From assembly GCA_028023455.1 (NCBI GenBank), contig JAQFVV010000006.1:19654001-19718000 (forward strand): 64,000 nt of DNA, given 5' to 3'. The translations under genes were made by a program, and so were the position numbers. This DNA is from Epiperipatus broadwayi (lineage: Eukaryota; Animalia; Onychophora). Numbering within the stretch: position 1 is the stretch's first letter; every line of letters begins with the position of its first letter. Under the pieces are notes generated by a model. It was not told the DNA's origin. It did not search any database and worked only from the letters and a program-made list of their open reading frames with translations. This document shows, piece after piece, positions 15,886 to 46,893 of this stretch.

Positions 15886-16245
15886 TGAGCTATAGAACAT
15901 AGAAAAGCTTAGTCTTGCTTCCAAGTGAATCCAAACTCTACCACTGTGAACTAGCAGTGGTGGGTACACTGTCTCTTGCCTTCAGTTATAACTTCATAGT
16001 TTTCATGCTGTCATAATCTGTAAAAACTTTAAAAATTTCCCTAATCTTATTTTCAATCATTTTATAGTCAGATAGAAAAAAACACAATAATAAAAAGCAA
16101 GTTTTCTTTATCTTGATTGAAAAAAGTTAATGACTCTTTTCAATTTACCTTAATCCTTTGAAAAACAACTTTGTAGCATTTTTATCACAATATGTTATAT
16201 AAGCTTTAATTTTAAAAAAGTTCTTTAATGAAAATAAATAAAAAA

Positions 16246-16745
16246 NNNNNNNNNNNNNNNNNNNNNNNNNNNNNNNNNNNNNNNNNNNNNNNNNNNNNNN
16301 NNNNNNNNNNNNNNNNNNNNNNNNNNNNNNNNNNNNNNNNNNNNNNNNNNNNNNNNNNNNNNNNNNNNNNNNNNNNNNNNNNNNNNNNNNNNNNNNNNNN
16401 NNNNNNNNNNNNNNNNNNNNNNNNNNNNNNNNNNNNNNNNNNNNNNNNNNNNNNNNNNNNNNNNNNNNNNNNNNNNNNNNNNNNNNNNNNNNNNNNNNNN
16501 NNNNNNNNNNNNNNNNNNNNNNNNNNNNNNNNNNNNNNNNNNNNNNNNNNNNNNNNNNNNNNNNNNNNNNNNNNNNNNNNNNNNNNNNNNNNNNNNNNNN
16601 NNNNNNNNNNNNNNNNNNNNNNNNNNNNNNNNNNNNNNNNNNNNNNNNNNNNNNNNNNNNNNNNNNNNNNNNNNNNNNNNNNNNNNNNNNNNNNNNNNNN
16701 NNNNNNNNNNNNNNNNNNNNNNNNNNNNNNNNNNNNNNNNNNNNN
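16246..16745. other. Assembly gap (500 N)
   Basis: Run of N; both flanks carry the same sequence taaaaaagttctttaatgaaaataaataaaaa. Confidence 0.99.
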
Positions 16746-17599
16746 TAAAAAAGTTCTTTAATGAAAATAAATAAAAAGAATTTTATAATTACCAGTATAT
16801 ATATTTTAAGACAAAAACATGCTTATTTTATTTCCAAATCATAATAAAATATTAATTAGACCTTTTTTAAATGTTTAATGTATAACAATTTTTTTAAAAT
16901 TCAAAATTATTTATTCATTAACTGTTATTTCAGTATAATATAGAAAATAACTACAAAAAAAGTGTTTATTTCTGCTTTTCCTTTCAATTTTATATTGAAG
17001 CATTCTGTGTGTCTGCACACACAGAGCTTCATGATATTTATTTAAATGTAATATAAACCTAGGGTGATAGATCAAATAGCTAATTTTTCACCCTCTTTAT
17101 TATCAAAATAACATATATATATATATATATATGCAGGTGTGTGTATGATTGAATGATGTTGCACATGTATATATTGTTAACATTAAAATACATTTCAGTT
17201 ATATATTTGGAAAAGAAAATGTATTTTTTTGTTTTGTATGTTTTCTAAAAAAAGAAATGGAAAAATTAGGTTGACTCGTTTTTTTTTTTTTTTTTTGGTT
17301 TTTTTTTTTTGCAATTAACAGATTTTACTGATTTTTTTTTTTTTTCTCAAAATATGATTTATTAACATGATATCAATCTTTAAATTTACATGTCATATGT
17401 AGTGATATATAAGAATTAAATCATGATTTACAATGCAAAACATGATTTACCAAGTGAACAGAAAAACCCTGAATTGTATAAGCATATATCTTGCCATTCA
17501 TAGCTTCCCTTATAGTTTACCAAGTAACCCCTGACCTTAATGGCAATTAGATAGATCACAGCTACCAAAGGTCACATCATCTCCACAATCCAAAAGACG

Positions 17600-18975
17600 A
17601 GAAAGTGAAAACCCGTACTAATCCCTGCAGCACCCACGTCCCAGCCCCAATCGCTAAGGACTAGGAACCAGGCCTTGGGGTATTTCCAAAGCTCAGACTC
17701 TCTCATCCAATGCCCTTACTAATCCCCACAGCACCCAGATCCCCTCCAAAACCCAGGCTTGTGAGACTTTCCAAGCACCAGACCCTGCCATTCAAATGCA
17801 GAGATGAGCGACATAGCAGCCCTGATCCAAAGTTTAAGCCATAGCATTAATCAAAAATGTAAATCTCACATGCTTACATCATATGCCATCTACAGATTAT
17901 CACAAAGTCTAATAACCAAGCTATGAATCACATAGAGAACAAAGAGATTAAAACCACAATGCATCACGTCATCTCCACTGTCCTGAAGATGCAAGCCCAG
18001 GGAGCTCTCCAAGCAACAGACTGTCCTCAAGACCGCAAAGATGAGTGACACAGTAGCCCCAATCCAATGTTCAAATCACAGTTGAACTCTTTGGAAACTT
18101 GACTATGGTCCATCATGTTTCAGCTTCCAGACAACTTATAAAAAACTAGAAGCCTTAATCCATGAGGTCCTTAACTATTGGCAAAAATCAAATGATAAAA
18201 CGAGAAGAACAATCAATACGATGAGGAGCAACTGTTAACAATACAATGTCATAATAATTGCTACGTTTAAAATCATAGTGCTATTTTCATCGCTTTCCAA
18301 AATCAAGAACTTTAATGTATATGTAGTAACCAGATGCTTGGATTATGTGTTATACCACAATATAATTCTAGATCTATAGAGGAATCAAAGATGTACATAG
18401 AGTCATTTATCCATTAAAATTGCATATTGAGTAGTGTCCATCATGTTTCAGCGATCTGATAATCTATGAAAACCAGAAGCACTAATTCATATGGTCAAAT
18501 GCTAAAATGATTGATTTGTACAGTTCAGCATTCAAGATAGAAAAAAAATGTTTAATATAGAATGTAAGGTTGAATAATTAAGCAAAACTTGAAATCAAAT
18601 GTTCAGATACAGTCTAAAACAATTCACTATGGTGGAAAAAAATCTTTTTCACAAGTGAAATCTCAGTTCTAAAATGGAAGCACAAAACTGCAATGAATAA
18701 TGTTGTCATTTTTAACACATAAATGAGCCATCCAAATCTGGTATAACATTTTAAGAGACATAGTCAGTGATCCAGCTTCAAATGCATGGATAAAAGATAA
18801 AGCAGCACTTGAAATAAATGATCAGGTACAATAAGAAACAATTTACTATTGTGGAAAAATTCTTTTGAATAAAAAGCTCAGGCTTAAAAAGCAAGCATTA
18901 AAGTTTAAATAAATAACGCTACTATTGCTAACAAATAAATGAGCTATCCAATTCTGGTAACAATCTCCAGAGAAC
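17600..18975. repeat. Cluster of old, diverged direct-repeat modules
   Basis: Pairs seen by eye: ~17750-17835/17990-18075 (tccaagca.cagac..gcaaagatgag.gaca.ag.agccc); ~18105-18170/18435-18500 (gtccatcatgtttcagc); ~18620-18760/18840-18975 (aatt.actat.gtggaaaaa..aaatgagc.atcca..tctggt). Confidence 0.65.
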
Positions 18976-19699
18976 CTTTTTCCCAGCTCCACCCCATATA
19001 AAAACTAGTATTCAGGCCCTCAGGGGTCCTCCCAACAATCACACCCTCTCACCCAGTCAGCAAAGCTGCCTTGAATCAAAATATTCCCTGAAAATTCAGT
19101 CTTTCAATAAAAATCTCTTAGAAAATTTACGTGGCTGTCAGTTATTTTTAGCAGTGTTCCAAAGAAATATTTTAATCAAGCTTACTTGTTGTCTGATGGT
19201 GCCATAATTCTTGTGTATAAAGTAACCTAAAAGGTTACTCTGGTCAATTGGAAACCTTTTAGAGAAAAAAAATTTTTCTCTAAAATATAATTTAGGGAAC
19301 TAAAACAGGGAGTCACTAACAGAGTAAACTGGAGTCCCTGGAAGTCTTTTACAAAACATTTGGAAAAATACAGTTTCACTGGGACATGAATTATTTCATC
19401 TTGTCTTTCAGGGTAATTAAGTTTTCTTGCCTGATTTTAATCTTGATAAGTTTTTACAGATTGGTAAATTAAGAATTAGTCAACTGGTATATTTTCTTTT
19501 CCAGCAAAAGTGAGTCTGGGGAATTAATTAAAATGTTCTAAAATAATAAGAGTAAAGAAAAAACTCTAGACATTATAGCTGGAGGGATGACTAAATATGA
19601 TTTCTTAGTTTTTTGCTGAGTAAGATTTTTTTTTAATTTCTAGGCTTATAAATACTGGGTGATAGTTTCTCTTTTAAGACTCATTCTCTCTAATATACC

Positions 19700-19960
19700 A
19701 TTGAATGTAAGCAGATGTCATGTATTACCATTGTTTTTGAGTAGGACAAGCTTAGCCTTCCTTTTGGAAGATCTCTGGAGGGGGTGCATCTTTGGTGTAG
19801 TAAAACCTATTGATTCTATGATGCTGCTGCCAAGAAGGGGAGAATGTACTAGCTTCAAGTCCAGCCCTTTCCTGTGTCCAGTAAGCCAAGAGCCTGCCCA
19901 GAAATAAGTTTTAACTTGTAAGAAGACAGTTGTACCATCCTGCCTCATCAAAGTAATCAT
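19700..19960 (-). mobile_element. Possible LTR-retrotransposon aspartic protease remnant
   Basis: A minus-strand frame reads QALGLLDTG at ~19870-19897, matching the retropepsin (L/I)LDTG motif. The surrounding frame has stops. Confidence 0.4.
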
Positions 19961-22890
19961 CGAACGGCCTCCAAATGCAAGTATGAACTTTTAATCTTTA
20001 AAGATAAAATATTTTAAATGCCTTCTATAAAAACTCTATAATGTCTAGATTTAAATTCCTCAGATTCATAACTACTCAGTAAAAAAACTTGATCCCAAAG
20101 GAAAATGTAATTTAAAAAGACATTAATATATACATGAGTGTAGTAACTTTTATAATAAGTCAGACTATGTCAGAACTTAATTCCTAATTGTTATTGGAAC
20201 AAAATTCTATAAACTTTATAAATACAATTTTTTATTATTTATTTTGAAATATACCATGTCTTTTTTCTTTAGTTATAAAAATATATACTTTATTGATTAA
20301 CTTTATATTATATTGGTATGCCAATTCACAAGTATTTGGAGAGATGATATTTTAATATTTGATCAATTAATGCATAAGTGTTTGTCTTGTCTCCCACCTT
20401 TAGGTTGAAAATAATAATTATTTTATAACTTTAAAGTAACAAATGCAAGCTTGAATTTCTTAATCATTCATCCAAATCCTTGTGAGTTAAAATGGTGTCA
20501 TTTGTTTGATTAAAAAAAAAAAATGAAAATCAAATATCTGAATTAAAACTTTCAATCTATTGGTATTGTAACCTTTATAAATGGAAGAAAGAGAGATGAT
20601 GAGGGGAGTTAGGTGGCGGAAAAAAGGATAAAAATGATGAAGGAATAAGATAAGATACGAAAGAAAGGAAGAGAAAGAAATGAAAAATGATATGATAGAG
20701 GGTGCTAATTGTAACCTTTTAATGAAATGATGAGATGGGGGTAGGTAATGATGATGAAGACATAAGATAAGATGGAGATGAAGATAAGATGAAATGAAGA
20801 GGGAGATGATGTGATAAGAGACCAAAATGATAGAATGAAAAAATAAAATGATGAAGATAATGATAAACTAAATATCCTAATCTAATCTATTAGAGACTCC
20901 TAATGACTTGGCTCAGTGGGGTTACAATAAAATCAAGGATTAATAATGATCCAGAGATATACAATCGGACAGACCAAATTGAACATCACTGCAAACAACC
21001 ATTGTGGCATATTCATAATTTATCATAAATAATATAAAAGACGATTTAAATCATTATTTAAGTTAGTAGAATCAGCCTATTATCAAATCATACACTCTGA
21101 ATAAAGCAAATGATACTTTGTTGGAAGGACTATTTCACTAAATTATTATTAACAAGGCAACAAGAGTAAACACTCTCAGGGGTTTTAAAACTAAACTCTT
21201 GTGCAAGATAAAACTTTAAGTTGCCTACTAAATGATTGCTTGGATGAATAAACAAATGAGTGATATCTTTTATTTAATCTAAATTTAGACTAATTATGGC
21301 CTATTACCCAAGACATCACTCAAGCTGGGAAAAGGACAAAGGATACTTTTTATGCCTTTCCACATACTCACAGACAACCTACTAATGACATTAAATGCGG
21401 ATGGATTTTAAAATTTTAAAAATATACAAAATAATGTAAGATAATGTGCAGCTTTTAAAATAAATTCATAATGGGTTTTTTTCAATAATAAGGCTTTCTA
21501 CCTTTGTCCTTTATTCCATATGGATAGTGAGATGCAAAAGTCTCATGGAATTACCCCCGCCACAAATCATACCATTGTTCTATCAAACGCTCAAAAAAAT
21601 CAAAAAACGTGACCAGCTCCTTGCCTCCAGTAAAGTCTTTGCTGACACCTGGTCTTTAATTGCTCTTTCCTTTTCCTGATTATCAATTCCCACCTACCCA
21701 GCATTATAGAATAGTCATTTATAAAAGAAAATATTCATGTTTATATTAAAAATGCTAATACCATTAAACAAGTTCTTTGAATCTCTTCACTATATCTAAC
21801 CACATAAGAGTATAACATTGTGCTCTCATAACATAATCTAGCCAGATGACATATAGAACATTATATAATCATATTATTGTACAATTTATTCATTTATTTA
21901 TCCTTTATTAGTATGTAATCACTATTTATTGTTAATAAAATTTTTATTGAAATGAAATAGTAAAATATACTTCTGAATCACTAATATTCTTCATCTCACA
22001 TTGCATAATCTTCAGTCTAAAAAGATGTAATAATAACTTGAAAATCAATTTTAAAATGAGCATTCAATTAAGTATCTGTAATTATCTGTTACTGTGGTTC
22101 AATCTGGGGAATCACCAAGATTAGCATGGCTTTATATAATTTAAACCAGTATAAAAATATATTTTATATACTTTATGAAATTTTTGTGAACCTTTGGAAT
22201 TCAAGACAATATTTCATCTAAAAGAAAAACAAACAGAAACGAAACTTTTTAAATAATAAATTTGGTTTATTAATAACAATAAAGAATAAATATTTACAAA
22301 AAATAAATTACTGGAACAAACACTGCCGAGATAGCGCTGTTATTTTTTTTTAAACATTTTGTGTAACAATCTTTGTTTTGACTTATAGAAACTATAATAT
22401 TTTATTTGATTAAAGCTACTGATTATTCCTCTTTAACCTTTTTTTTAAACTGTTTACTTTGATAAACACAAAATAAATAAATAAAAGAGTAAACAGAGGC
22501 TATTTAATTCTATCCACATAATCTCCTTAAATAATTAAAAATTCTAAATCTCTTTATTATAATTATGGAGGTATGAGCTTAACAAACATAACCTTAAGTT
22601 TAATTGAAACATTTCATAATACTGTGGTGTTCTTTAACAACCAGAATAATACACTAATAGATTTATATTGTATACCATAAGCTAAGCAAAAGCTAAGCTG
22701 GGACTAGCATATACAGCATATATTTTAAATTATCATTAGTTACACGGACACTATTAATATTATAGATAGTGATGCATTTGAATAAATCTAAGCTAACTTT
22801 AAATTAAATTAGATGCATGGGGCATTCATCAGAGGTCATTTATACACATATTTTCAATAAATTCTGTCCACATAAAATTATTAAACCAAA

Positions 22891-22948
22891 TGTCCCAACT
22901 CCTCACTGAAGAGACCCATAGGTCAAAACCGGTCTGAGGATGGGGACA
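22891..22948 (+). ncRNA. Minimal type-I hammerhead ribozyme fold with G12A substitution (Penelope/retrozyme type)
   Basis: tcctca-CTGAAGA-GACC(cata)GGTC-aAAA-CCGG-TC-tgagga. Stem I tcctca/tgagga extended by tgtccc/gggaca, 4-bp stem II, palindromic loop III, GUC cleavage triplet ending at 22934. Confidence 0.8.
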
Positions 22949-25900
22949 ATCCAAGATAAAAATGATTTGAATGTCTTCTCTTGTAGTAGCATTTATCATA
23001 AATAAATAAAAAGCTTGTTTAGAGCTATTAGCACGCTCTTAATTTTACATATTTGTAAGTGCAAGCTATATATAAGTCATGTGACATCTGACTTGTTATT
23101 ATTACTATTAAACCAAATGTTGTAAAATTAGAATTTAAAAGACTTACAATTCCAGCGGTGAAAAACTCTGGATGAACATATTAAACTTAGTATGTGTGAA
23201 TGGCCATTTATAACCATATGCATAATCTACATACCCAAAATTAAATATAAATTATTGTTGGTTGGTTTGTGGATGATAAAACTATCATAACAACATAATT
23301 CAGACATTGATATACCTTTAAGCTAAATACAACCTGAAGAAACAAAGTACCTCAAAAAAACATATCTTGTCATTACATATTTAAAAACAAATGCAACATC
23401 ATTACTGTGGTGGAAATAGCATTAATATATCATGAGTGATAGGCCAAAATAAATACATATATGCTCCGCAGAGCTGAACAACTTCCTAAAAATGTGGTGG
23501 CTTCCAAAAATACTTATCTTTGAGGCAGAAAATAGGGTGCCTGTACCTTGTTTCAGCACATCAGGAACAGGAAAGACGCACCAGAAAAGTAGGATCCTCT
23601 CCATGGCATCTAAACACTTTCAAAATATGTGATTACAATCACTAGAAATACAATATCTAATACATAATAATCCTCAATGGGAATGAGCATCATCATCTCA
23701 TGGAAAGGCACTAGAATAAGGATGGAGGACCTTGTCTACACCAAAATATAATAAAGACTTGCTCTATGAGGCTAACAAATACTTAACTAATAACAAGACA
23801 TAAACATCATTTTAACTAAGTCATCATTAAAAAATTTTAAAATACAACACATATACTCAATGTCATAACCAACAATGCAAACTATGTCAACCGACTATAT
23901 AAGAACTACTTAAAAATTAAATGCATATAAAAATTCTAGGCAAAGATACAATGCACACATAATAAAATATCAAATATTGAAATATAGTGACTAGTGGACA
24001 TTTAAAAGATTGTGAATTAATTGTGAGAGAATTAATTCTCAATGCGTATATAAAAATATTTGTGGTTATTATTAATGTAGCATTTATAAAACAAATGAAT
24101 GGAAACCCTCTGATAAACCTCTTTGGCTGATTTATACAAAACTGAGTGAAATACCACACATTTAAATAAGCTAAGAATGAGATATTAAAATCTTCAGGGA
24201 TAAAAATTATTAAATATACATTAACTTATGAGATGCTTAACAAATACAATAATACTAATATTATTACCTGAGAATAGTAGAATATCTACTCATTCTAATA
24301 AACCCATTAAAACCAAAATTATATAATTTAAATTACCTGGAATATTTATACCAATAGTGTTACACATATTTATAAAATAAATATTGCATAAATATTTTTC
24401 TGGATTTCTTTTTTTTTTTTAAACCAATAAAACAAACAAAATAAAAATACAATAACTTTAGTTCATAGCTACAGCTTCCTCCATATTGGCTTTTCTGTTA
24501 AATACGTGTATATCATTCATTGAATACTATTTATCTGACAGCACAAAGCTTCTGGCCTAAACATTTAATTTAAACATGGCAAAGATTTCCAAACAAAACA
24601 TATTTAATGGTTCTTTAAAGTTAATGCAATTTCTTCCTTTAAAGATATTTTGAGTTCAAATAAGCACTATAATAAAACATGATACTAATACTAATAAAAA
24701 TAATAAAATGAGCCGGCGACCGAATGGAAGTAAAACAAATGATTCAGCTGATAATATTACTATGGGATCCCGCGTTTACTTAAACAATAATATAGCTTCA
24801 ATTTCATTCTATTTCTTTTTTTTAAAAGAACACATTTCGAAGCAGTTTTTTTTTTTTAAATCTACTCACAATATTTTTTTAAAGATGTTTCTAAATAATT
24901 TTTCTGTACTCTTCTTAAAATAATAGTGGAAACATTTTACAAATAGGAAATTCAATCTGTCCAATGAGTTAGAAATAATTGTCATAAATTTCACATATAG
25001 ATTTAAGCAAATATTTCTCAGTTCATTATAACTATACTTTAAAATCTAATAGATAAAAGTTCTTCCTTAAATAATTGCAGTTTATATTTTTATAACTATT
25101 TCAGAAGCAGATAATTAATATAACAAAGAATATCTTGGAGTTAATATCAGGCATCATTAATATAATATAGGTACTTGAAATCAGCTATAAACAAACTTAA
25201 AACAAGGATATTGAAGCTTTTCAAGTATATAATTAAATCACTATACATATTTTTAAACTTTCCTCGTTTAAATTTTCTTTTATCTAATAAATAACTGAGT
25301 AATTTTTGACTATAAAGTTTGGTGCAGTAACAGTCCTTTAGCTATAAATATATTAATTGTCTATATCTTAAATTCATTTCACGGAAGATATAATTTATAC
25401 GATTAATAGAGAAGATAGCTCATATAAAATTTCCTTTTAACATTTCTACAATAGTTTAAAGAGAATTAACTGAAAGTCAATGACAAGAATATGGGTTACC
25501 TCTTCTCCTTTTAGCAGTCACACATTATAATCTTGGAGTAATTAAATATACAATTTAACATACTTTTGTTTAAAAAAATAATAAACTTTAAAAATAATTA
25601 CAACTTATTTTAGAAGAAAGATTTCAGGAAACTTTAGGATTCAAATCTTAATACAGTAAAACTTTCCTATATATATCCTTATTCTTTTTTTCTTCCCAAA
25701 ATTTTTTTCATGTCAATTTATCTTAACACTTTAATAGATCACTTTCGTTATTGGTCAAGTGAAGTAAAACTCTGAAACTTTTAATTGGTCAAGTGAGAAA
25801 CTTTTTGATACAAATATTTTCATCTTTTAATATATATTAATTTTAGTTTCATTTTCAAAAAGTATATTAATTATTTGTATTTTATAGATATATTCAAAAG

Positions 25901-28599
25901 CGGAAAAATCAAAGAAAACATTAGGAGCAAATTAGAAGCAATGTAAATGTCATTTAGATCCCTCCCAGATTTCATGTTATGAATTTTTTAAGAATTTTTT
26001 AGGAAAAATCTTAACGTCTTTCTCAAAATAATGATACTTTCAGCATATTATTAAAAAAATACACCAAAAATACATTATAATGCCAGAAAAATATTCTAAA
26101 ACATTAATCTTTGTTTGAAAATCAAATAAACAGCTTGGAGCAATCTAAACTCTTGACAAGATCTCAAAAATTGTTACTAACGTTGATTTATTTTCCAATG
26201 TACGATCGTGTAAAGTATACAATTTTTTAATAAAACCTTACTACTTTTGTAAAATAACTATATTTTTATCAGATTTTATGAAAATTATTTATAATATGTA
26301 CGAAACATAATAAAAAAAACACTCCAAAATATATATTTTCATTTTAGTAGTGAAAAAATATTTAATGGAATCATCAGTCAATAAGAATTGAGAATAGATT
26401 GAGAATAGATTATCCAACCAATCAAAACTGGCCTTCTTCTTTTGTTCAACTTAAAACCCTCCTAGTATTGATTTTTTACTTGTAAAATAATTCAGAAGAT
26501 GGCAGCATCTTATAGGCCTTGCTCTAAGCTTTAATATGGGTATTTTTTCATCAATGTAACTAAAAAATTGGCTGAGTTAGAGCAATCTAAAGGTGACAAC
26601 CGCGATTTCACAGTTCAGGCTATTTTATTTTAACTGTAATTCCTTTTAAAATCAGCTGGAAAATTAATTGATTTGGTAAATGACATCAGTTTGATCTAAT
26701 TATTTGAAAATCACGTGGTTTAATGACTCTAAATTAAAAGTTAATTATTAGCTTTTATGTAGCCTTAATATAAAAAAATGTCTTACATAAAATAAAAATA
26801 AAAAACTAATATAAAAATTAAAACTTATCTCATTTATCAAAGAATTTTTAAATATTTAATCATAATAATTTTATTCATTTGTTTTCTTTTTAATTAATAT
26901 TATAGTTAAATTATCGATTCATTTTCTTCTTGTATCTCTATGCATGCACACACACAGGATGACCTTACTTAACCTTCACTCGTTAATTATAATTTTTTAA
27001 TGACTACAAATAAAAAAATATTAAAGAATATTATACTAGAAATAACTTTTAACAAAATAAGGCCAATTTACATTAAAGATTAAATTATTATTTGACTGCT
27101 TTAAGAAAACTAAAGATTAATTTTAAATCAATTTGATATTATTTATTTTATTTACAATATTAGTTCAGTTATTAGTTATAAACTAGAAATAAACAAAACC
27201 AAGTTATTTTATGATATAGTTAACATCATCTATTATTATTTTAAATACTAACTTAAATATTTATTTTGAGGAAAATGCTATCCCACATCTTAAACACAAC
27301 TAATTACAAATAGGTGACTTACTTTGCACATATAAAATTTACTAAATATCACAACATTACCAATTATTATTACATCCTATTCATTAATGAACTAATTTCT
27401 TCATTTTTTTTAAATAAATAATTATACAATGGTTTAGCTAATATAAATTCTAGCAGGTATTAGGACCAAGTGAAGTTTCACTTAGGTACAGTATATATGT
27501 AATTAAGCCAATGCCTCGTTAATAAAATTTAAAAATAAATAAGTGCTAAAATCATTATTTAAGTCCACATCTATTTAGTTTATATTTAGTTGAAATTGTT
27601 TATGACAATTAAATGAAATAATATATATATATGTGTGTGCATTTATTTACATGTTAAAAGAAATTATCATGTTTTTTTTCTTAAATGTAAAATGGGCAAT
27701 ATTCTTTATTATAAAATTATGTGTTCATCTCACTATATCTATTTAATAATGTATACATTTAGGGGACAAGAACTCTGTCTCAGCAGGCATATTGCCTCCT
27801 TAGCAATTTACTATTATAATTCATAATTAAGCTTTATATTTAATTAAGATCATAGACATTTTATAGCCTATAAAATATGGTTATCTTGATTTTCACATCA
27901 TTGCTTCTTTTATTAAATTTTAAATACAGGCTTAAATATCCAAGTATGAGTTAGGGCCTTTTGGCCAGTATATCAGTGTTACTTGGTAGAATAATCTGTG
28001 CCTACATACTTCCAATAAATGAATAGATTTCAAGTAATGCTATGTGAGCTGCTAGACGGATAGTTTACTGGTACTAGAAATAGCCATGTTTTTGAGCCGA
28101 TAAATGAGTATTCTATGACGATAGTGATTCATAATGCACGCTCCAGTTCCTGCACATACCATGCTGATGGCGGATGTGTCTACAGAGGAATATATATATA
28201 TTTCTTATTAATCAATAATGGAGATTGGCCTATCCAGCCAATGCCTATAATAATGTAGTCAGTACAGAATTCAAACCCAGATACCACTGTCTTCTGTAAT
28301 TAAGTTTATTAATAATACCTATTAGTAATGCTGTGTGGGATAGATAAACCATATCTATAATGTAATTGTTAATAATAATGGGAGCTAGAATTATGCTTTG
28401 TTCCATAACTTCTGCTGGGATTAATAAAATAAATAATAAAAAAAAATACTTAACTTCCCCTATGTATGTAAACATGCACATCAATTTGATATATATATAT
28501 TTCTGGCCTCTAACTTGATACATAACCAGGTATTGCCTACACTCGACAAATGGCATATTAATTTTATAGTGGCATACTTCTTGATCAAACTGGCATATA

Positions 28600-29040
28600 A
28601 TTTATTTGTAATGCTCATACATGTATCACACTGATATCTAAATATTGTTATATTAACTTCTAGTTTATTAGTAATGCTCAGACACGTATCATATTGATAC
28701 ATAAATGTTGTTATCATTATTAAAACAGTTTCTTTGTAATGCTCATACACATATCACACTGATACACAAATGTTATCATTATCAACATGTAGTTCTTTTG
28801 TAATGCCCATATACGTATCACACTGAATTCTAAATATTGTTGTTATTAACTTCTAGTTCATTTGTAATGTTCATATACGTATCATATTGATACCCAAATA
28901 TTATTATTATCATTATTATTATTAACCCACAGTTCCTTTGTAATGCTCGTTCACATATTATACTGATATCTAAATATTATTATGATTATTAATTTCTAGT
29001 TCATTTGTAATGCTCATACATGGATCAATGAGATCCAAAT
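28600..29040. repeat. Tandem minisatellite, 7 units of 63-76 bp
   Basis: Unit starts (t/a)gtaatg(c/t) at 28607, 28670, 28735, 28799, 28863, 28939 and 29006. Confidence 0.9.
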
Positions 29041-29295
29041 AATATTATTGTTATCCTATATCTTGCTGAAGTTATTAATATGTATATTTATGTTTATACA
29101 CTTGTCGTGTCTTTCTCTGGTTCACCACATCCACCCAACTATATCCACACTTAGTTAAGTGATTTATGAGTCTACTCAAAACCCCTTGAAGTATATAAAA
29201 ATAGTATTCTAAGCACTGTTAGAGTATTAGGTTCTTATGGGAGCTGGTATCTGATCAATTAATTTAGTAACTAATTCATTACTGAGGCTGAGTTT

Positions 29296-29523
29296 AAATC
29301 TGCAGACTCATTGTTTTTACCCTGACCACCAGGACCAAAAGAAAATCATTATCATTACTAGCATAAGAAGAGTTGATTGGATAGTGAAGATTTTGGAGCA
29401 CTGGCAAAGAAGTTAAAGCTTAGTACTGTTCTACGACTACCATATCCCAAACATGATGGGTTTGAAGTACTTTTGCTAGGTCTCTGAATCTTGTTGGCTG
29501 AACACACAATTTTGACTGTTACA
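29296..29523 (+). repeat. 5' LTR, 3'-terminal block (LTR may extend upstream; TATA-like gtatataaaa at ~29191)
   Basis: Roughly 85% identical by eye to 31870-32090; ends gactgttaca. Confidence 0.75.
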
Positions 29524-29545
29524 TGGTTATATTTTTTTATGGGTG

Positions 29546-29565
29546 TGGCACCCAATGTGAGGCTC
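29546..29565 (+). promoter_or_regulatory. Primer-binding site complementary to tRNA-Lys(CUU) 3' end
   Basis: TGGCACCCAATGTGAGGCTC versus TGGCGCCCAACGTGGGGCTC = 17/20; two of the three mismatches are CpG transitions. Confidence 0.8.
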
Positions 29566-30367
29566 TGATATATTTTTTTCCGGGTTTGGCTTCCCAACAT
29601 GGAACTTCGATATAGAAACCCACATACCCTGAGTAATAATTTTGATTTGAACAAAATAATTTTTTTTGTTAAGATGTGTAGAGATATTTTTGTTTTCCAG
29701 GTTTGATACCACAATGTGAGGCAATTAAATTATACCCCACATCCATGAAAGATAGTTTATTTTTCCAAGCTTGTTGCATAAATTTTGATGTTTTATCGGA
29801 TAGTGGTTAGTGACATGGCGCCCAGAGATAATCTTTAAAAAAAATTCAGGTTACTCTAAATAAATTGTCATCAGTCAGGAGTTTGATAATCACAGTGGAT
29901 ATTACTGACTTTGTTGCATGGATTGGTGATGATGGGGACACATAGACTGATGTGGATATAAACAAAAGATAACACAAGGGTAATAAAGTGAGATGATGGT
30001 GTAAAAGGTATCAACAAATTCTAATAGTTTGTCTAGGTGTAGTAGAGCAACCAATTTGTAAGCAAGGGGGCAGTGACAGATCTTAAGAGGGTAAGATAAA
30101 TTTATATATATATATATATATATCTTTATATATCTATGTTCTAGATTTTATTTTAATTATACATGTAAAATTTATCTCAAGTAAATAGTAGTAGATAGGC
30201 AGGTATGGACTTATTATGAATATAGGGAAAAGAATAGGCAAGGTATGGAAATGATAAAGAAGAGGATGAAGATGCAATGGGAGATTGGTAAGAGGGGAAG
30301 ATATAACATTTTATGAAAAAATAATAGTACAAAGAGAATTGTTTAGATGAAGAGATAGTTGTAGAAA

Positions 30368-30650
30368 ATGGAAGGCCATTATAGTATAAGTAAAAAAATG
30401 GGAGTGGTGCTTCAAGACGTATACCAGCTACTGATGACCATGAGGATAGAGTTCAACCAGATAGCAGAGGAAATGAGTGAATTCAGAAAGGGGGCTGAGG
30501 AACTAAACAAAAGAGTAGATAATCTGGGAAATGCTCTATGGGGGAACTTTGAGACCATCCATGAAGAAATGCAGAATGTACAAGGACATCAGTGGGAGGA
30601 CATAAGGACCTTGCAACATGATCAAGTGGAAAATATTGAGACAGTATTCC
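30368..30650 (+). pseudogene. Gag-like coiled-coil ORF segment of the LTR element
   Basis: Heptad-like helical sequence (FNQIAEEMSEFRKGAEELNKRVDNL) placed downstream of the PBS. No diagnostic gag motif seen; call is positional. Confidence 0.5.
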
Positions 30651-30654
30651 AAGT

Positions 30655-31495
30655 AATGATTCAAGTACCACCAATTGAATTTGTTCAGGTATTACCAAAG
30701 GTTGAAGCTATTGAAAAACAATGCTAAATAAGTGTGTGAAACTTCTAGTGAAAAAGATGTTGTAGAATGGCAGAAACACACTCTTACAGAGGGAGAGAAT
30801 ACAACTTTATTGCTGAAGATAGAAAAAGAATATTGATCACGAATTAGGTTACTATGGATGATGCAGGAAGATATGGTTATTCCATTGATAAAAAATATTA
30901 CAACATCTGAAATCAAAGACTTAGTCAAACCAAAAGCTCCAACTACTTCACAGGTAGTCAATTATGATAAACCTGCAATTACAATCAAATGGGATGAACC
31001 TGAGGAGGATGGTGGCAGTTCTATATTTAATTATGTCATTGAAAGATGTGATAATGTTGGTTTAAGGTTACATTCAATGCTGGTTTTGAAATAAATGAAA
31101 CTACTATACTGTAACAAGCTTAATTGAAGATTTTAGAGTATTGAAATTAATGAAACTTACTATATTGTAACAAGCTTAATTGAAGATTTAGAGTATGAGT
31201 TCAGAGTGATTGCTCAAAATGCTGCAAGTATGGTAAAGCCCTCATCCCCAACCCCTATCTATGATAAAAAATTAAATGGTTAATGTTTATATTCGTAAGG
31301 ATGTTACTCTTCAGTGCAAATTTAAAAGTGATCCTTTGCCTACAGTCATGTGGTGTATGGATGGAAAGGGACTTGAATCTAGCAATAAACACTTGATGAC
31401 TTGTATAAAAGCTATAACAATGATTATTGTTAAAGCTAGCATTGAAGATTCTGGAGAGTATGTCAGTGAAGAAAAAAATCATGTGGGAAATAAGT
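30655..31495 (+). pseudogene. Intron-less titin/twitchin/projectin-family fragment (Ig - Fn3 - Ig I-set), disrupted
   Basis: Ig1: PPIEFVQVLPKVEAIEK..CE....VEWQK..YNFIAEDRKRILI..VTMDDAGRY. Fn3: PKAP..VVNYDKPAITIKWDEPEEDGGSSIFNYVIERC..EYEFRVIAQNA. Ig2: VTLQCKFKSDPLPTVMW.MDGKGL..EDSGEY..N.VG. Frameshifts and stops present, no introns between domains. Confidence 0.88.
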
Positions 31496-31499
31496 GCTG

Positions 31500-31850
31500 G
31501 AGTTGGGTAGAACCCATTAATCATATTGTTAATCAGGCCACTAACTATATGCCAATCTGCCTTCATTTTGGTCATAATTTCCTGAGTATGATTAAAACCC
31601 TGCTATCAACAGAGGGAATGAAAATTGATAAAGGTCTTGGAACACCTAAAGAGAACTGCAGGAAAACAAAGAAAGAGGGTCATACAACCATACCATTTCC
31701 CAATGGGTGACCAGATGTGGGTATGCATGCTATGTGTTAGGGATTCATGGCAGAATCAATGTAAGAAATTCTCTCCACTATATTGTCGGTCTTTCAAGAT
31801 AAGAAAGCTTTGTGAAAAAAATCCATTTCTCATTCAGGACCATAAGGGCA
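31500..31850 (+). pseudogene. Gypsy integrase C-terminal region (end of core plus GPY/F SH3-like motif)
   Basis: INHIVNQATNYMPICLHFG resembles N..H..T.YTP..L.FG; FPMGDQMWV..KKFSPLYCRSFKIRK..NPFLIQD resembles F.VGD.V...KL.P.Y.GPF.I..N.Y. Confidence 0.8.
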
Positions 31851-31869
31851 TCAGGGGAACACATAATCC

Positions 31870-32090
31870 ATAGAGTCCTTGTTTTACCCTGACCACCAGG
31901 CCCGAAAGAAAATGATTACCATTAGTAGCAAATGGAGCGTTGATTGGATGGTGGAGGTTATAGAGCACTGGCAAATAGGTTAAAGCTTAGTACTGTTCTG
32001 CAACTACCATATTCCAAACTTGCTGGGTTTGAAGTACTTTTGCTAGGTTTCTGAATCTTGTTGGCTGAACACACGATTCTGATTGTTACT
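31870..32090 (+). repeat. 3' LTR block
   Basis: Direct repeat of 29296-29523; homology stops exactly at gattgttac(t). Confidence 0.75.
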
Positions 32091-33395
32091 ATATATTCAC
32101 ATATGCTATATTGTATGACATGAGATGCATAACCATCTCAATATATATATATTAATTGCAGGTAAATGATTCTTACTGCAGAACAAACAAGAATAAGCAT
32201 AAGAAGTACTTATGAGCAGATAGTTGTAAAATACAAAAGTCTTTATAAAAAGCTTTTAATTATTAAAACAATATCCAGAGTTGAACTAAAACCTAAGTGA
32301 GATGTCATTCATTTACAGTTCAATTTTTTTTTCTTCCTTTGTTTAACACAAAACAGCATTTTAATTGCATCATTTGCCATTAACAAAATCAATAGTTTGG
32401 AACTTCAGCATTAAATAATATATTTCAAACTTACAAATTCAGAACTGTTTAATGATTCTGTCACTAAAATAACTTTCCTAGGGAAAAAAAATTATAATGG
32501 AGAAAAAACAAGCACTGTATTTTTAAATCAATTTAATAGGGGCATGTGCTAAATATAAACTGTCAACTTCTTTTTATACAAATTATTTTATTAAAAATAT
32601 AGAAATTGCTAACTATAATTTTTTTTAAACAAAAAAATAAATAATACACATAACCTCAATAATAATAAAGGAAATTAGTTTATTACATATAACCTTGCTA
32701 ATTCAGAGAGGAAATGTCAATGAAATTTATATGGTTACCATAAATGTAAAATCCAATATTCATACTATAGTGAATGAAAATGCAATTTAAAATAGTTTCC
32801 GCCTACTGACTTTCTTTGTAAAAGGACTACTGCTAGATACCCTGATGCTATCAGTTTTTTGTGTAGAAAAAAGAAATTATGGAACATTATATTAGGTGTT
32901 AATCCTTACAATTCCATTATAACCTAATATGTATCACCATTCCTGAATATAAGAATAACTATCCTCATCTTTTCTACCATTTTGTGTGATGTTACTTCAT
33001 CAAACATCTAGAAAATTTCAATCACTGTTTTTAAATAAGTATAATAAAATAAATATCAAAAATCAGACTTTAGCCCCACTGTCTGATATCCTTACTGGTA
33101 CCACTGTAGTTACATGACCTGACTCAAAAACTAGGGTTTGTTTTTCCATACATACTATATTTGTGAAAAATTAATTTTCTAATATGTAGTATATTTCTTA
33201 TAGCTATTTGATTATGTAAATAAGTTACCAGTTCTCAACATAATTATTATATTTTACCTGATACTGAAGCTATACACATATATCCACATGTGTGCTAGAC
33301 CATTCACTGTTTAACTACTGACCCTAAAGTTAATTACAGTGAATGGATATTAAAAATAAATTATAAAATATTTAGTGAAATTTATCTGTATATAT

Positions 33396-34120
33396 AATTA
33401 AATTCCAACCAGTAACCACCTAAACATTCACAGTAAAATATAGTAATCAATATTTCTCACTGCTGTCTCAAGGCAACCTTCACACCTTCCATTCTTACTA
33501 ATGGTCCACTGAATATATATGGACACTTAAAGCTTGCAACTTGACTACAGAGTATGAAATATTGATACAATGAAGTTTAAATAAACCTCTTTTTTTTTTA
33601 AGTGTCACAGCATTGGCCGGGACGCAAACCCGCAACCCGGGCAACTGCCTGCAAGGCAGTCGCGCTGACCTTTCGACCACCAATGCAGGTAATAAACCTC
33701 TTTAAACATGTCACTGCAATGCAGACTAATAAATAGTCAATTAACATTACAAACTGCAATACTTTTAAATTGCCCATGTATTATTTAGAAATAATAAGCA
33801 AAATAGTGCCTAAAGCTAATCAGGGATAATGATGTAATTAAATTCCAACCAGTAACCACCTAAACATTCACAGTAAAATATAGTAATCAATATTTTCTCA
33901 CTGCTGTCAAGGAAACTTTCACATCTTTTAATAGCAAGAATGGAAATCCATTCTTACTAATGGTACATTGAATATATATGGACACTTAAAAGCTTGCAAC
34001 TTGACTACAGAGTATGAAATATTGATACAATGAAGTTTAAATAAACCTCTTTAAACATGAAATAAACATGTCATTGTAATGCAGACTAATAAATAGTCAA
34101 TTAACATTACAAACTGCAAT
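33396..34120. repeat. Near-tandem duplication (33396-~33770 and 33835-34120)
   Basis: Both copies start taattaaattccaaccagtaaccacc and are highly similar; copy 1 holds a SINE insertion, copy 2 is cut by an LTR at 34125. Confidence 0.92.
33593..33690 (-). mobile_element. tRNA-Gly-derived short SINE with poly(A) tail and 13-bp TSD
   Basis: Minus strand GCATTGGTGGTC..CCCGGCCAATGC (acceptor stem as in tRNA-Gly-GCC), then TGTGACACTT and an A tail; TSD aataaacctcttt at 33580-33592 and 33691-33703. Confidence 0.9.
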
Positions 34121-34124
34121 ATAT

Positions 34125-45164: not shown

Positions 45165-46893
45165 GTGATGATATGATGTGATGTACTATGGTTTCTCCTT
45201 AAGCAAAGTCAAGAATCTCTCAGCAATTATGCCCAAAGAAACCTGTTAGCCATTTTATTTTCCATTCCCCACTCTAAGTTTTCCCATATTCTGCTCCATC
45301 CCATTTCCACAACATAATCTTTGTCAACTCTATGGCCTTTATAACTAAATCCCCCTTATCTTTTCGCAAACCCAGCATAAACACCAATAATCCACTTTCT
45401 GTATAATCACTTTTTTTTCATATTTACTCTTTCATAACTTCATTATATGTATCCTTTCTGTTTTCAAGCATTTACATTTAATTAACAGATACTTAATATT
45501 TTCTAACCCTCTTTACACAATTCACAGATTAAATCACCCATATTTTTCCCATTTGCATGTACATTCTCTTGCAGCTAAAGATCCTGTTTGAGCCTTAAAC
45601 AATAAACTACTTTCCTTATTATTATCATATATTAACTCGCACCTAATATTGTTTACTTCTATATATACTTAAACTCTTTTTACTCTCCATACTAGTTCTC
45701 CATCTCTCTAATTCCCTATTCTTTACTAATAAATCTATTCTTTTATCCCATTCCTTGCCACTATAACACCCAACAATCCTCCTAACACAATCATTCCATA
45801 TTTTGTACAAATATACTGATATAAATTCTTTATCCAAATCTTTGGCATACTGCATTACCTTTCTCACCCATCTTGTTGCCTGCCCTTTATTCATAACCCA
45901 ATTAAATACTATTTTGGCTATTCTTTTATTATCCATAAACTGCAATCTACCAAACATTTTCATTTTACTTTTTGCATCTCTCATATAAAAATTTGACCAT
46001 CCCATTTCTCCTTGAATTGCCTCCCTTGCTGTCTATACATCTGCATCCAATGCATGTCTTCCTACTTTCCTTTGAACTTTTTCTAAATAATCTTATACCC
46101 CCTTTACTAACACATAATACATCATTACCATATGTTAACACTGCTACTGCAACCCCCATATAATTCTGGCTACATCATATTTATTATATGATAACACTTA
46201 ATTTATTTATCAATCCCTTTCTTTTCTTTGCTTCATTTATCTTTTTTTTTTCTCCCATTCATCAAAACAATTTTTCTGATTACTTAAAATAATTCCCAAA
46301 TAACTATATCTATTCACCACACTTAACTTAATATCTCCCAATAAAAATTCTACATCTTCTCTTTCCCCAGTATTAACCATCATTACTTTTGATTTTTCTT
46401 CACTAAATTTAATCCCCATCTCTTTACCCACGCTTGCACATGTGCTCACCATAACTGCCATATCTTCTCTTCTTTCTGCATACAAAAATATATCATCCAC
46501 AAAAAAAAGACCTGACAAAATATATACGCCCTTACCACCTATTAACAGTATCTCTATCCCTCTTCCTAATCTTTCTATTGCTCTTTCCATTTCACTCAAA
46601 TACAACACAAACAAAATAGATGACATAGGGCATCCTTGCCTTAGTCCCACCTCATTTTTCACTTTAACTGATTCTATATTCCCTAATTGATATATATAAT
46701 AATTATTTTCATATAATTTCTTAATAATATTCACCCATTCCCAAATTTGCTAAACTTATCCATAATCTATTTCTATTTACTCTATCACATGCCTTCTCTA
46801 TATCTATAAAACTCATATATAACTGTCTACCTGAATTCCTACTCATATCCATAAGTTGTGTAACTACAAATAAACTATCTCCTATACGCCTAT
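45165..46893 (-). mobile_element. 5'-truncated non-LTR retrotransposon (RT to C-terminus, clade not determined) nested in the hAT
   Basis: DRRIGDSLFVVTQ..FIDIEKACDRV; GLRQGCPMSSILF..LFFVDD; TYGNDV; SMESKKSLSIYR..YDNNKESSLLFKA; (CATCA)n-like 3' tail at ~45165-45182. Confidence 0.9.

What the first reader, a model, noticed from the sequence alone, without database searches (positions are those of the whole stretch)
29296..32090. LTR retroelement that captured a spliced titin/twitchin-family mRNA segment in place of pol
Seen, in order: LTR block, tRNA-Lys PBS, gag-like ORF, intron-less Ig-Fn3-Ig muscle-protein fragment (~840 bp), integrase C-terminus, LTR block. No protease, RT or RNase H. Known: LTR elements can package host mRNA and incorporate it by RT template switching, common in plants but reported for few animal loci. 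Inference: a host-gene transduction, possibly a once-mobile non-autonomous family. Caveats: the 3' repeat covers only ~220 bp and I found no TSD or clean PPT.
Basis: partly seen in the sequence, partly recalled or inferred. Interest (0 to 1): 0.9.

Follow-up and report, generated by a model that had tools for sequence, protein, structure and literature searches.

The report
LTR element carrying captured titin-like exons
This is an old, broken copy of a mobile-DNA family that swapped most of its own genes for three spliced exons of the host's giant titin-like muscle gene, and the exons sit in a scrambled order that suggests they may have been copied from a circular RNA.

Summary
The two ~215-bp "LTR blocks" are only the tails of ~3.7-3.8 kb LTRs. 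The element really spans window 16996-32090. Its 5' LTR is split by two nested insertions, and one ~3.9 kb deletion at an AGAGT microhomology removed the PPT region and most of the 3' LTR.

It is an old, dead member of a family with over 100 copies (~10.3 kb). At least 8 young copies keep an intact 556-584 aa reading frame: gag N-terminus + Ig + Fn3 + Ig + integrase C-terminus.

Autonomous relatives in the same genome have the same gag N-terminus and integrase C-terminus ~4.15 kb apart. The ~0.84 kb insert therefore replaced the rest of gag, plus PR, RT, RH and the integrase core.

The parent is a giant Ig/Fn3 gene on contig C6208. Three neighbouring exon groups are 57-84% identical to the insert, against 26-38% for that gene's other exons (up to 48% over short stretches). 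The insert lacks a 4.7 kb intron and a ~0.1 kb intron.

The exon order is circularly permuted, with a back-splice-type junction. That points to a circRNA or another scrambled transcript as template. The parent DNA could not be fetched, so splice sites remain unchecked.

The parts
16992..16995 (.). Candidate 4-bp target-site duplication ATAT, 5' side
   Evidence: ATAT precedes the LTR start TGAAGC and follows the LTR end. Copy C6239 shows the same ATAT. Low-complexity sequence, so weak evidence.
16996..17381 (+). 5' LTR, first segment (LTR positions ~1-405). The LTR starts TGAAGC.
   Evidence: blastn against the 3' LTRs of C103 and C6299, 64-68% identity. Sequence shown.
17382..19418 (.). About 2 kb not aligned to the family LTR. 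Likely a nested insertion, or LTR sequence decayed beyond recognition.
   Evidence: a gap in the otherwise collinear LTR alignment. Not characterised.
19419..20592 (+). 5' LTR, second segment (LTR positions ~400-1640)
   Evidence: 64-73% identity.
20593..27492 (.). About 6.9 kb nested insertion inside the 5' LTR, with no long ORF
   Evidence: Not characterised.
27493..29523 (+). 5' LTR, third segment (LTR positions ~1630-3811), ending GTTACA. It contains a 63-76 bp tandem array at 28588-29058.
29524..30367 (+). 5' untranslated leader, with repeated degenerate PBS-like motifs and a (TA)n run
   Evidence: collinear with the other copies.
29546..29563 (+). PBS-like 18-mer TGGCACCCAATGTGAGGC, 22 nt after the LTR end
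   Evidence: Young copies read TGGCGCCCAATGTGGGGC. The match to the tRNA-Lys1,2 3' end is from memory and was not tested here.
30368..30646 (+).
   Evidence: the family's N-terminus is 62-70% identical to the start of the 460-510 aa gag-like frames of autonomous relatives; predicted as a long helix at modest confidence.
30647..30667 (+). Window containing the 5' junction between gag and the host insert
   Evidence: Homology to autonomous gag ends at ...NIETV. Homology to the parent exon starts one residue before PP.EF.
30668..30920 (+). Ig domain 1, frameshifted here. Matches parent exon C6208:5212719-5212985.
30921..31272 (+). Fn3 domain. Matches parent exon C6208:5207083-5207391. Its 5' edge at 30920/30921 is the non-collinear (back-splice-type) junction. 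It carries a window-specific 56-bp tandem duplication (31089-31133 / 31145-31189) and a 38-bp deletion at its 3' end.
   Evidence: 84% identity to the parent exon over 49 aa..
31273..31494 (+). Ig domain 2, lacking its last strand. Matches parent exons C6208 ~5212128-5212244 and ~5212340-5212489. The exon-exon junction lies at about 31351-31360.
   Evidence: I-set 6e-11; 74% and 67% identity.
31495..31871 (+). Integrase C-terminal remnant (end of the catalytic core plus an SH3-like domain), fused in frame to Ig2 and frameshifted once. The junction lies within 31490-31505.
   Evidence: homology to autonomous integrases starts at residue 6 of this part. Atlas score 0.94 to SH3_Tf2-1, Integrase_p58_C and MLVIN_C clusters. 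SH3_Tf2-1 at E=4e-4 in copy L013.
31872..31876 (+). AGAGT microhomology at the ~3.9 kb deletion. The deletion removed the last ~335 bp of the internal part (PPT region) and the first ~3.59 kb of the 3' LTR.
31872..32090 (+).
32091..32094 (.). Candidate target-site duplication ATAT, 3' side

Best explanation
Window 16996-32090 holds an old, dead copy of a non-autonomous Ty3/gypsy-like LTR retrotransposon family.

Family structure:
- Complete members are ~10.3 kb: two 3.7-3.8 kb LTRs and a 2.8 kb internal part.
- The internal part carries one chimeric reading frame of ~560 aa. It consists of the first ~136 aa of the element's own gag, then ~278 aa of Ig-Fn3-Ig, then the last ~120-145 aa of its integrase.

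Origin of the insert:
- The Ig-Fn3-Ig part was copied from spliced RNA of a giant titin-like gene of the same genome (contig C6208).
- The most likely mechanism is reverse-transcriptase template switching inside a particle.
- The insert replaced ~4.1 kb: the rest of gag, protease, RT, RNase H and the integrase core.

How it spreads:
- The chimera kept its LTRs, PBS, leader and PPT, so related autonomous elements in the same genome can copy it in trans. This step is inferred.
- The family reached over 100 copies, some of them very young.

What is shown and what is inferred:
- Shown: the anatomy, the family, the autonomous relatives, and the coordinates and identities of the parent exons.
- Inferred: the template-switch mechanism, mobilisation in trans, and any role of the chimeric protein.
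For: Structure and family:
- copies share the whole unit, and complete copies have LTR pairs 81-97% identical.

Chimeric frame:
- one copy (L029) has a 539 aa stretch without stops.
- at least 8 copies have uninterrupted 556-584 aa frames.
- Pfam I-set and fn3 hits are above cut-off in five copies.

Autonomous relatives:
- together. At C6346, C853, C6559, C117, C6506, C6212 and other loci, a gag-N homolog (62-70% identity) lies ~4.15 kb upstream of an integrase-C homolog (52-57% identity) on the same strand.
- At C6346 these sit in open frames of 462 and 1113 aa.

Parent gene:
- dozens of single-domain Fn3 exon matches on C6208 (+ strand, 5.2-7.1 Mb) at 29-38% identity. One exon, 5207083-5207391, matches at 70%.
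- the same exon is 84% identical to the window copy, more than any other element copy is.
- the Ig2 pieces at 5212128-5212244 and 5212340-5212489 match at 57-74%.
- the Ig1 exon at 5212719-5212985 matches at 66-71%.
- The match starts (5207083 and 5212719) are identical for different queries. Element copies, by contrast, match straight across these points.
- The older copies (window, L016) are closer to these exons than the young copy L029. This fits a gene-to-element direction.

Outside relatives:
- the best outside matches are proteins that their sources name titin-like or twitchin-like.
Against: - The DNA of C6208 and of the autonomous copies could not be fetched. Exon status rests on coordinates, identities, open-frame lengths and sharp match ends. 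Splice sites were not seen.
- One Ig2 piece contains a TAA. This is plausibly the alignment running into a GTAAGT splice donor, but that was not seen.
- Pairwise dN/dS among copies is 0.7-1.0, and AlphaFold2 gives no confident Ig or Fn3 fold. The chimeric protein is probably not under amino-acid constraint.
- The PBS-like motif lies 22-26 nt from the LTR end, not next to it.
- The TSD is low-complexity ATAT.
- The RT class of the autonomous partner was not examined.
Confidence: 0.85

Rival explanations
1. The capture happened as in the best explanation, but from an ordinary linear mRNA. At the time of capture the parent gene had a tandem duplicate of the Fn3*-Ig2*-Ig1* exon block, or a different exon order, so that Ig1-Fn3-Ig2 was collinear. 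The duplicate was later lost, or the gene was rearranged, or the assembly of C6208 is mis-ordered here.
For: - Giant Ig/Fn3 genes grow by tandem duplication of exon blocks (established knowledge).
- The capture is old: 57-84% aa identity to the parent.
- The 424 bp between the neighbouring Fn3 exon (5206354-5206659) and Fn3* was not inspected.
Against: - No second close copy of any of the three domains was found in the genome. All other exons of the gene are 26-38% identical, up to 48% over 48 aa.
- The Ig1|Fn3 junction coincides with exon ends on both sides. This fits splicing, but it also fits this rival.
Confidence: 0.2
2. The three C6208 pieces are not exons. They are rearranged old fragments of this same element family that landed inside the giant gene. 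The true parent is then unknown, lost or foreign, and the exon-junction argument falls.
For: - Some old element copies also lack stops over 200-280 aa (C34, C6206).
- One of the pieces contains a TAA.
- The DNA was not seen.
Against: - The pieces lie within a gene that occupies only about 0.03% of the genome, on its coding strand, 424 bp from another of its exons.
- Matches stop sharply at domain borders at identical coordinates for different queries.
- The Fn3 and Ig1 pieces have lengths that are multiples of three (309 and 267 bp).
- No gag-N or integrase-C match lies next to them.
- Their order is not collinear with the element.
- The window copy is more similar to the Fn3 piece (84%) than to any element copy.
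Confidence: 0.07
3. Capture happened at the DNA level: an element inserted into or beside the gene and recombined with it. RNA was not the source.
For: None specific.
Against: The insert contains no sequence from the 4.7 kb or ~0.1 kb intervals between the parent pieces. The pieces abut without unaccounted residues.
Confidence: 0.03

Closest known systems
circRFWD2-derived pseudogenes associated with MMERVK10C LTR retrotransposon sequences in mouse (Dong et al., Cell Res 2016, PMC4897178)
   Same: Host exons with a non-collinear (reversed) exon-exon junction, present in dozens of copies and flanked by LTR-retroelement sequence. The authors read this as retrotransposition of a circular RNA.
   Different: - Here the host piece is fused in frame to the gag N-terminus and the integrase C-terminus, giving one ~560 aa ORF that is still intact in young copies.
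- The carrier is a gypsy-like element with 3.7 kb LTRs.
- The parent is a giant Ig/Fn3 muscle-type gene.
- The back-splice has not been seen in RNA.
Gene-fragment-carrying LTR retrotransposons of plants (for example maize Bs1; reviews PMC13317346 and PMC2774510, titles and abstracts seen; Bs1 itself recalled from memory)
   Same: A non-autonomous LTR element in which spliced host gene fragments replace gag-pol sequence, amplified in trans.
   Different: - An animal genome.
- A single parent gene.
- Permuted exon order.
- In-frame fusion on both sides.
Acutely transforming retroviruses with gag-onc fusions (established knowledge)
   Same: A replication-defective LTR retroelement in which spliced host coding sequence replaces viral genes, is fused in frame to gag, and depends on a helper.
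   Different: - This is a germline-amplified genomic family.
- The captured domains are structural Ig/Fn3 modules, with no sign of amino-acid constraint (dN/dS 0.7-1.0).
- No disease link is implied.
LARD, large retrotransposon derivatives of plants (established knowledge)
   Same: Very long LTRs (~4 kb), a short internal part without RT, and dependence on a gypsy-type partner.
   Different: LARD internal domains are non-coding. This family carries a long chimeric ORF with host domains.

Membership tests
LTR retrotransposon | Two long direct terminal repeats bounded by TG...CA around an internal part | tested here: met
   - Complete copies: in C6239 the LTRs are 3.8 kb and 96.9% identical, running TGAAGC/TGTATT...GTTACA. 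C6299 is 96.6%, C103 88% and C12397 81%.
- Window: a fragmented 5' LTR and the last 219 bp of the 3' LTR.
LTR retrotransposon | Target-site duplication at the element's ends | tested here: inconclusive
   ATAT is found on both sides in the window (16992-16995 and 32091-32094) and in C6239. It lies in AT-repeat context, and only two elements had both ends available.
LTR retrotransposon | Primer-binding site complementary to a tRNA 3' end, next to the 5' LTR | tested here: inconclusive
   TGGCGCCCAATGTGGGGC (C6239) and TGGCACCCAATGTGAGGC (window) lie 22-26 nt after the LTR end. By my recollection of tRNA-Lys1,2 these match 17/18 and 15/18. No tRNA-Lys gene of this genome was available for comparison.
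LTR retrotransposon | Polypurine tract before the 3' LTR | tested here: inconclusive
   Only a short GAGGGA lies directly before the LTR. A longer A/G run lies ~75 nt upstream. This region is deleted in the window copy.
Ty3/gypsy (Metaviridae) lineage | Pol domain order PR-RT-RH-IN and RT phylogeny | not testable with these tools
   The family itself has no RT. The autonomous relatives (for example C6346:4885-9476) could not be fetched.
Ty3/gypsy (Metaviridae) lineage | Integrase C-terminal SH3-like (Tf2-1 type) domain | tested here: inconclusive
   - Pfam SH3_Tf2-1 scores E=4e-4 (20.8 bits, below the cut-off of 30) in L013 and 0.15 in L025.
- Atlas feature score 0.94, with 179 shared features, to clusters carrying SH3_Tf2-1, MLVIN_C and Integrase_p58_C.
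- It is 52-57% identical to the ends of long pol-size frames in this genome.
Host-gene-transducing retroelement (spliced RNA capture) | The insert is homologous to a host gene well above paralog background | tested here: met
   57-84% identity to three neighbouring exon groups on C6208, against 26-38% for that gene's other exons, up to 48% over 48 aa.
Host-gene-transducing retroelement (spliced RNA capture) | The insert joins parent exons without the introns | tested here: met
   The pieces lie 4.7 kb, ~0.1 kb and ~0.25 kb apart in the gene and are contiguous in the element. This is based on coordinates; splice sites were not seen.
circRNA-derived retrocopy | An exon-exon junction in reversed genomic order | tested here: met
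   In the element, the end of the Ig1* exon (to 5212985) abuts the start of the Fn3* exon (from 5207083, 5.9 kb upstream). Both borders are sharp and coincide.
circRNA-derived retrocopy | The corresponding circular RNA exists | not tested
   The one reads call was used on the element itself, and the runs were contigs of unknown kind.
Thymidylate synthase fragment (considered for the 'gag-like' ORF) | A reproducible match to PF00303 across copies | tested here: not met
   - Only the window copy matches (E=1.1e-6).
- Eight other copies scanned do not match.
- Against the host's own TS, 11 of 2000 shuffles reach the observed score.
- A genome scan with PF00303 finds only the real TS gene on C6608.

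The most novel reading that the evidence does not exclude
The host insert was reverse-transcribed from a circular RNA made by back-splicing four exons of the giant titin-like gene (Fn3*, Ig2*a, Ig2*b, Ig1*). The reverse transcriptase went almost exactly once around the circle between two template switches. This created an in-frame gag-Ig-Fn3-Ig-integrase gene that then spread as an LTR-element family. It would be a germline record of a circRNA packaged and copied by a gypsy-like element in a non-mammalian animal.
Probability: 0.4. Interest if true: 0.85.

Novelty: new variant of a known kind. Interest (0 to 1): 0.7.

Why it matters
Capture of host coding sequence by LTR retroelements is classical for oncogenic retroviruses and common in plants. 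Documented germline families in animals are few.

This case has all the pieces in one genome: the chimera, its autonomous relatives and the parent exons. The two switch points can therefore be mapped to within a few codons.

The permuted exon order gives a concrete, testable case for circular or otherwise scrambled RNA as a substrate of retroelement reverse transcription. This extends the mouse circRFWD2/MMERVK10C observation.

Practical consequences:
- The family scatters over 100 titin-like Ig/Fn3 pseudo-exons, several in open frames, across the genome. These can be mis-annotated as genes.
- Such pieces could in principle supply ready-made domains for exon shuffling.

Tried and rejected
- **Thymidylate synthase origin of the 'gag-like' ORF.** The window copy hits Pfam at E=1.1e-6, but PDB matches are weak. 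The shuffle test gave 11 of 2000. There is no hit in any other copy, and a genome scan finds only the real TS gene. Rejected as chance.
- **Reading the 215-bp repeat as the whole LTR, or the unit as a tandem repeat.** Rejected by the flank comparisons.
- **Purifying selection on the chimeric ORF.**
  - Pairwise NG86 dN/dS is 0.7-1.0 for all three parts, with the integrase part lowest at 0.4-0.9. There is no clear amino-acid constraint.
  - A rough calculation gives 270 stop-creating changes, so P(no stop) is 7e-2 to 8e-6 for K=0.03-0.13. This hints that the replicating lineage was selected to stay open. It is an inference only.
- **AlphaFold2 of the intact 539 aa stretch with 13 natural copies as alignment.** Mean pLDDT was 33.5 and only the N-terminal helix was moderately confident. 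The model was not usable, so no fold search was run.
- **The search for homologous proteins with the Fn3 part.** No candidates. This genome's ORFs do not appear to be in that collection.
- **Representative search.** Only distant titin- and twitchin-like proteins, 25-39% identity per stretch.
- **Sequencing runs.** The family is present under two organism labels (A and B). The runs are small contig sets of unknown kind, so nothing can be said about transcription.
- **Fetching C6208, C6346 and the young copies.** I did not try another route.
- **Consensus lines.** The alignment tools printed consensus lines on their own. I did not use or reproduce them.
Full report
**1. What is at the given coordinates**

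- The region holds a direct repeat of 208-219 nt (29309-29523 and 31872-32090, 87-88% identical).
- After the left repeat comes TGGCACCCAATGTGAGGC (29546-29563). From memory, this is the tRNA-Lys1,2 type of primer-binding site.
- Translation and Pfam show four parts in order:
  - a helical N-terminal frame (30368-30724);
  - a frameshifted Ig domain;
  - an Fn3 domain (C-half E=1.6e-4) with a local 56-bp duplication;
  - an I-set Ig domain (E=6e-11) that runs in frame into a sequence with the look of an integrase C-terminus.

**2. The boundaries were wrong**

- A search of the window's own genome (5.6 Gb) gave many copies at 72-80% identity over the whole unit.
- None of about 25 copies with 1.5 kb of 3' flank had a second '215-bp block'.
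- Instead, the flanks of the copies are homologous to each other on both sides.
- In 20-kb stretches around four copies, the 215-bp block is the end of a 3.7-3.8 kb LTR running TGAAGC...GTTACA.
- LTR pairs are 96.9% (C6239), 96.6% (C6299), 88% (C103) and 81% (C12397) identical.
- The internal part is ~2.8 kb, and the whole element ~10.3 kb.

In the window:
- The 5' LTR begins at 16996 and is cut into three segments by insertions of ~2 kb and ~6.9 kb.
- The internal part is 29524-31861.
- A single deletion of ~3.9 kb at a shared AGAGT (31872-31876) removed the PPT region and all but the last 219 bp of the 3' LTR.
- ATAT flanks both true ends, here and in C6239. This is a weak TSD.
- A 500-N gap lies 250 bp upstream of the element.

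**3. The family and its reading frame**

- Several copies keep long open frames. L029 has 539 aa without a stop, within an open frame of 563 codons.
- Genome searches with this frame and its parts found 123 places for the second Ig domain.
- At least 8 copies have uninterrupted frames of 556-584 aa at 92-100% identity.
- Pfam finds I-set and fn3 above cut-off in five copies.
- The window copy has 2 in-frame stops, at least seven frameshifting deletions and a 56-bp duplication. It is about as far from every other copy as they can be (72-80% DNA identity). It is an old fossil.
- Pairwise dN/dS is 0.7-1.0, and AlphaFold2 does not fold the domains. The protein sequence seems free to drift.
- The replicating lineage has nevertheless stayed open, which is unlikely by chance. 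This is an inference.

**4. Gag N-terminus and integrase C-terminus: the element's own parts**

- The last 121 aa match other elements at 52-57% identity from residue 6 onward. These matches lie at the ends of open frames of up to 1113 aa.
- The first 144 aa match at 62-70% identity (residues 11-136) to frames of 460-510 aa.
- At C6346, C853, C6559, C117, C6506, C6212, C203 and others, the two matches lie on the same strand, with the gag-N match ~4.15 kb upstream of the integrase-C match.
- These are autonomous relatives with a gag frame and a pol frame.
- In the chimeric family the two parts are ~0.85 kb apart. The insert therefore replaced ~4.1 kb of gag-C, PR, RT, RH and the integrase core, in frame at both ends.
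- Integrase identity is supported by the Atlas search and weakly by Pfam SH3_Tf2-1.
- The thymidylate synthase hit of the window's N-terminal frame is not reproduced in any other copy and is chance.

**5. The parent gene**

- Outside this genome, the best matches are proteins named titin-like or twitchin-like by their sources, at only 25-39% identity per stretch.
- Inside the genome, the Fn3 part matches dozens of single-domain, stop-free pieces of ~290-310 bp on the + strand of contig C6208, from 5.2 to 7.1 Mb (Ig exon matches reach down to 5.17 Mb). It matches a second set on C73. Identity is 26-38%. These are the exons of giant Ig/Fn3 genes.
- One piece stands out: 5207083-5207391, at 70% identity to the young copy L029.
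  - It is 84% identical to the window copy, closer than any element copy is.
- The Ig2 part matches 5212128-5212244 and 5212340-5212489, at 68% and 57% to L029 and 74% and 67% to the window.
- The Ig1 part matches 5212719-5212985, at 66% to L029 and 71% to L016.
- The match starts at 5207083 and 5212719 are the same for different queries, even when the query extends further. Element copies match straight through.
- The pieces account for residues 2-270 of the 278-aa insert without gaps.
- I read them as exons of the parent gene. The insert lacks the 4.7 kb, ~0.1 kb and ~0.25 kb intervals between them.

**6. The scrambled order**

- In the gene the order is Fn3*, Ig2*, Ig1*. In the element it is Ig1, Fn3, Ig2.
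- The Ig1|Fn3 junction of the element (window 30920/30921) joins the end of the exon at 5212985 to the start of the exon at 5207083, which lies 5.9 kb upstream.
- That is the signature of a back-splice.
- The two ends of the insert are neighbours in the gene: the end of Ig2* and the start of Ig1*. The insert therefore looks like almost exactly one turn of a four-exon circle.
- A precedent exists in mouse. Dozens of circRFWD2-derived pseudogenes with a reversed exon junction are flanked by MMERVK10C LTR sequences (PMC4897178).
- Alternatives are a lost tandem duplicate of the exon block, exon-repetition transcripts, or a mis-ordered assembly.
- I give the circular-RNA reading about 0.4.

**7. 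Verdict**

This is a helper-dependent, gypsy-like LTR family with very long LTRs. Its gag-pol was replaced by spliced exons of a titin-like gene, fused in frame, amplified to over 100 copies and recently active. The window holds an early, much damaged copy.
- The kind of event is known. The in-frame double fusion, the size and youth of the family, and the back-splice-type junction make it a new variant.

Noticed in passing
G000:C6198:4852544-4853499 (minus strand; coordinates only): A gag-N homolog (79% identity) and an integrase-C homolog (57%) lie only ~215 bp apart, with no Ig-Fn3-Ig between them. This looks like a different deletion derivative of the same element lineage.
   Followed up: no
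G000:C6208 5.17-7.10 Mb and G000:C73 5.52-5.84 Mb (+ strand; coordinates only): Two giant genes made of single-domain Ig/Fn3 exons. The C6208 gene spans at least 1.9 Mb by exon matches.
   Followed up: partly
window 28588-29058: A tandem array of seven units, 63-76 bp apart, inside the LTR. The same LTR region is repetitive in other copies too.
   Followed up: partly
window 33392-34121, including 33609-33686 (-): A duplication with a ~360-460 bp period, 95-100% identical. It contains an ARAGORN tRNA-Ala(TGC) call, so it may be a tRNA-derived repeat.
   Followed up: no
window 46240-46734 (-): A 165-aa ORF with a reverse transcriptase match (RVT_1, E=1.2e-14) from another retroelement.
   Followed up: no
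window 16246-16745: A 500-N assembly gap 250 bp upstream of the element's 5' LTR. The 177-aa 'ORF' at 16228-16761 is an artefact of the Ns.
   Followed up: yes
L037:5154-7884 (C6239 copy): A 2.7 kb insertion inside that copy's 5' LTR. It carries its own 523-bp direct repeats at 99.6% identity, so it is probably a young small LTR-type element.
   Followed up: no
G000:C12440:2358963-2361140 (-; coordinates only): One family copy has a 741-aa open frame with the N-terminal and Ig1 parts matched twice. This is an internal duplication within the chimeric ORF.
   Followed up: no
G000:C6608:93071-146235 (+); L039-L044: The host thymidylate synthase gene, with its exons spread over more than 50 kb. 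This illustrates the ~10 kb introns of this genome.
   Followed up: partly
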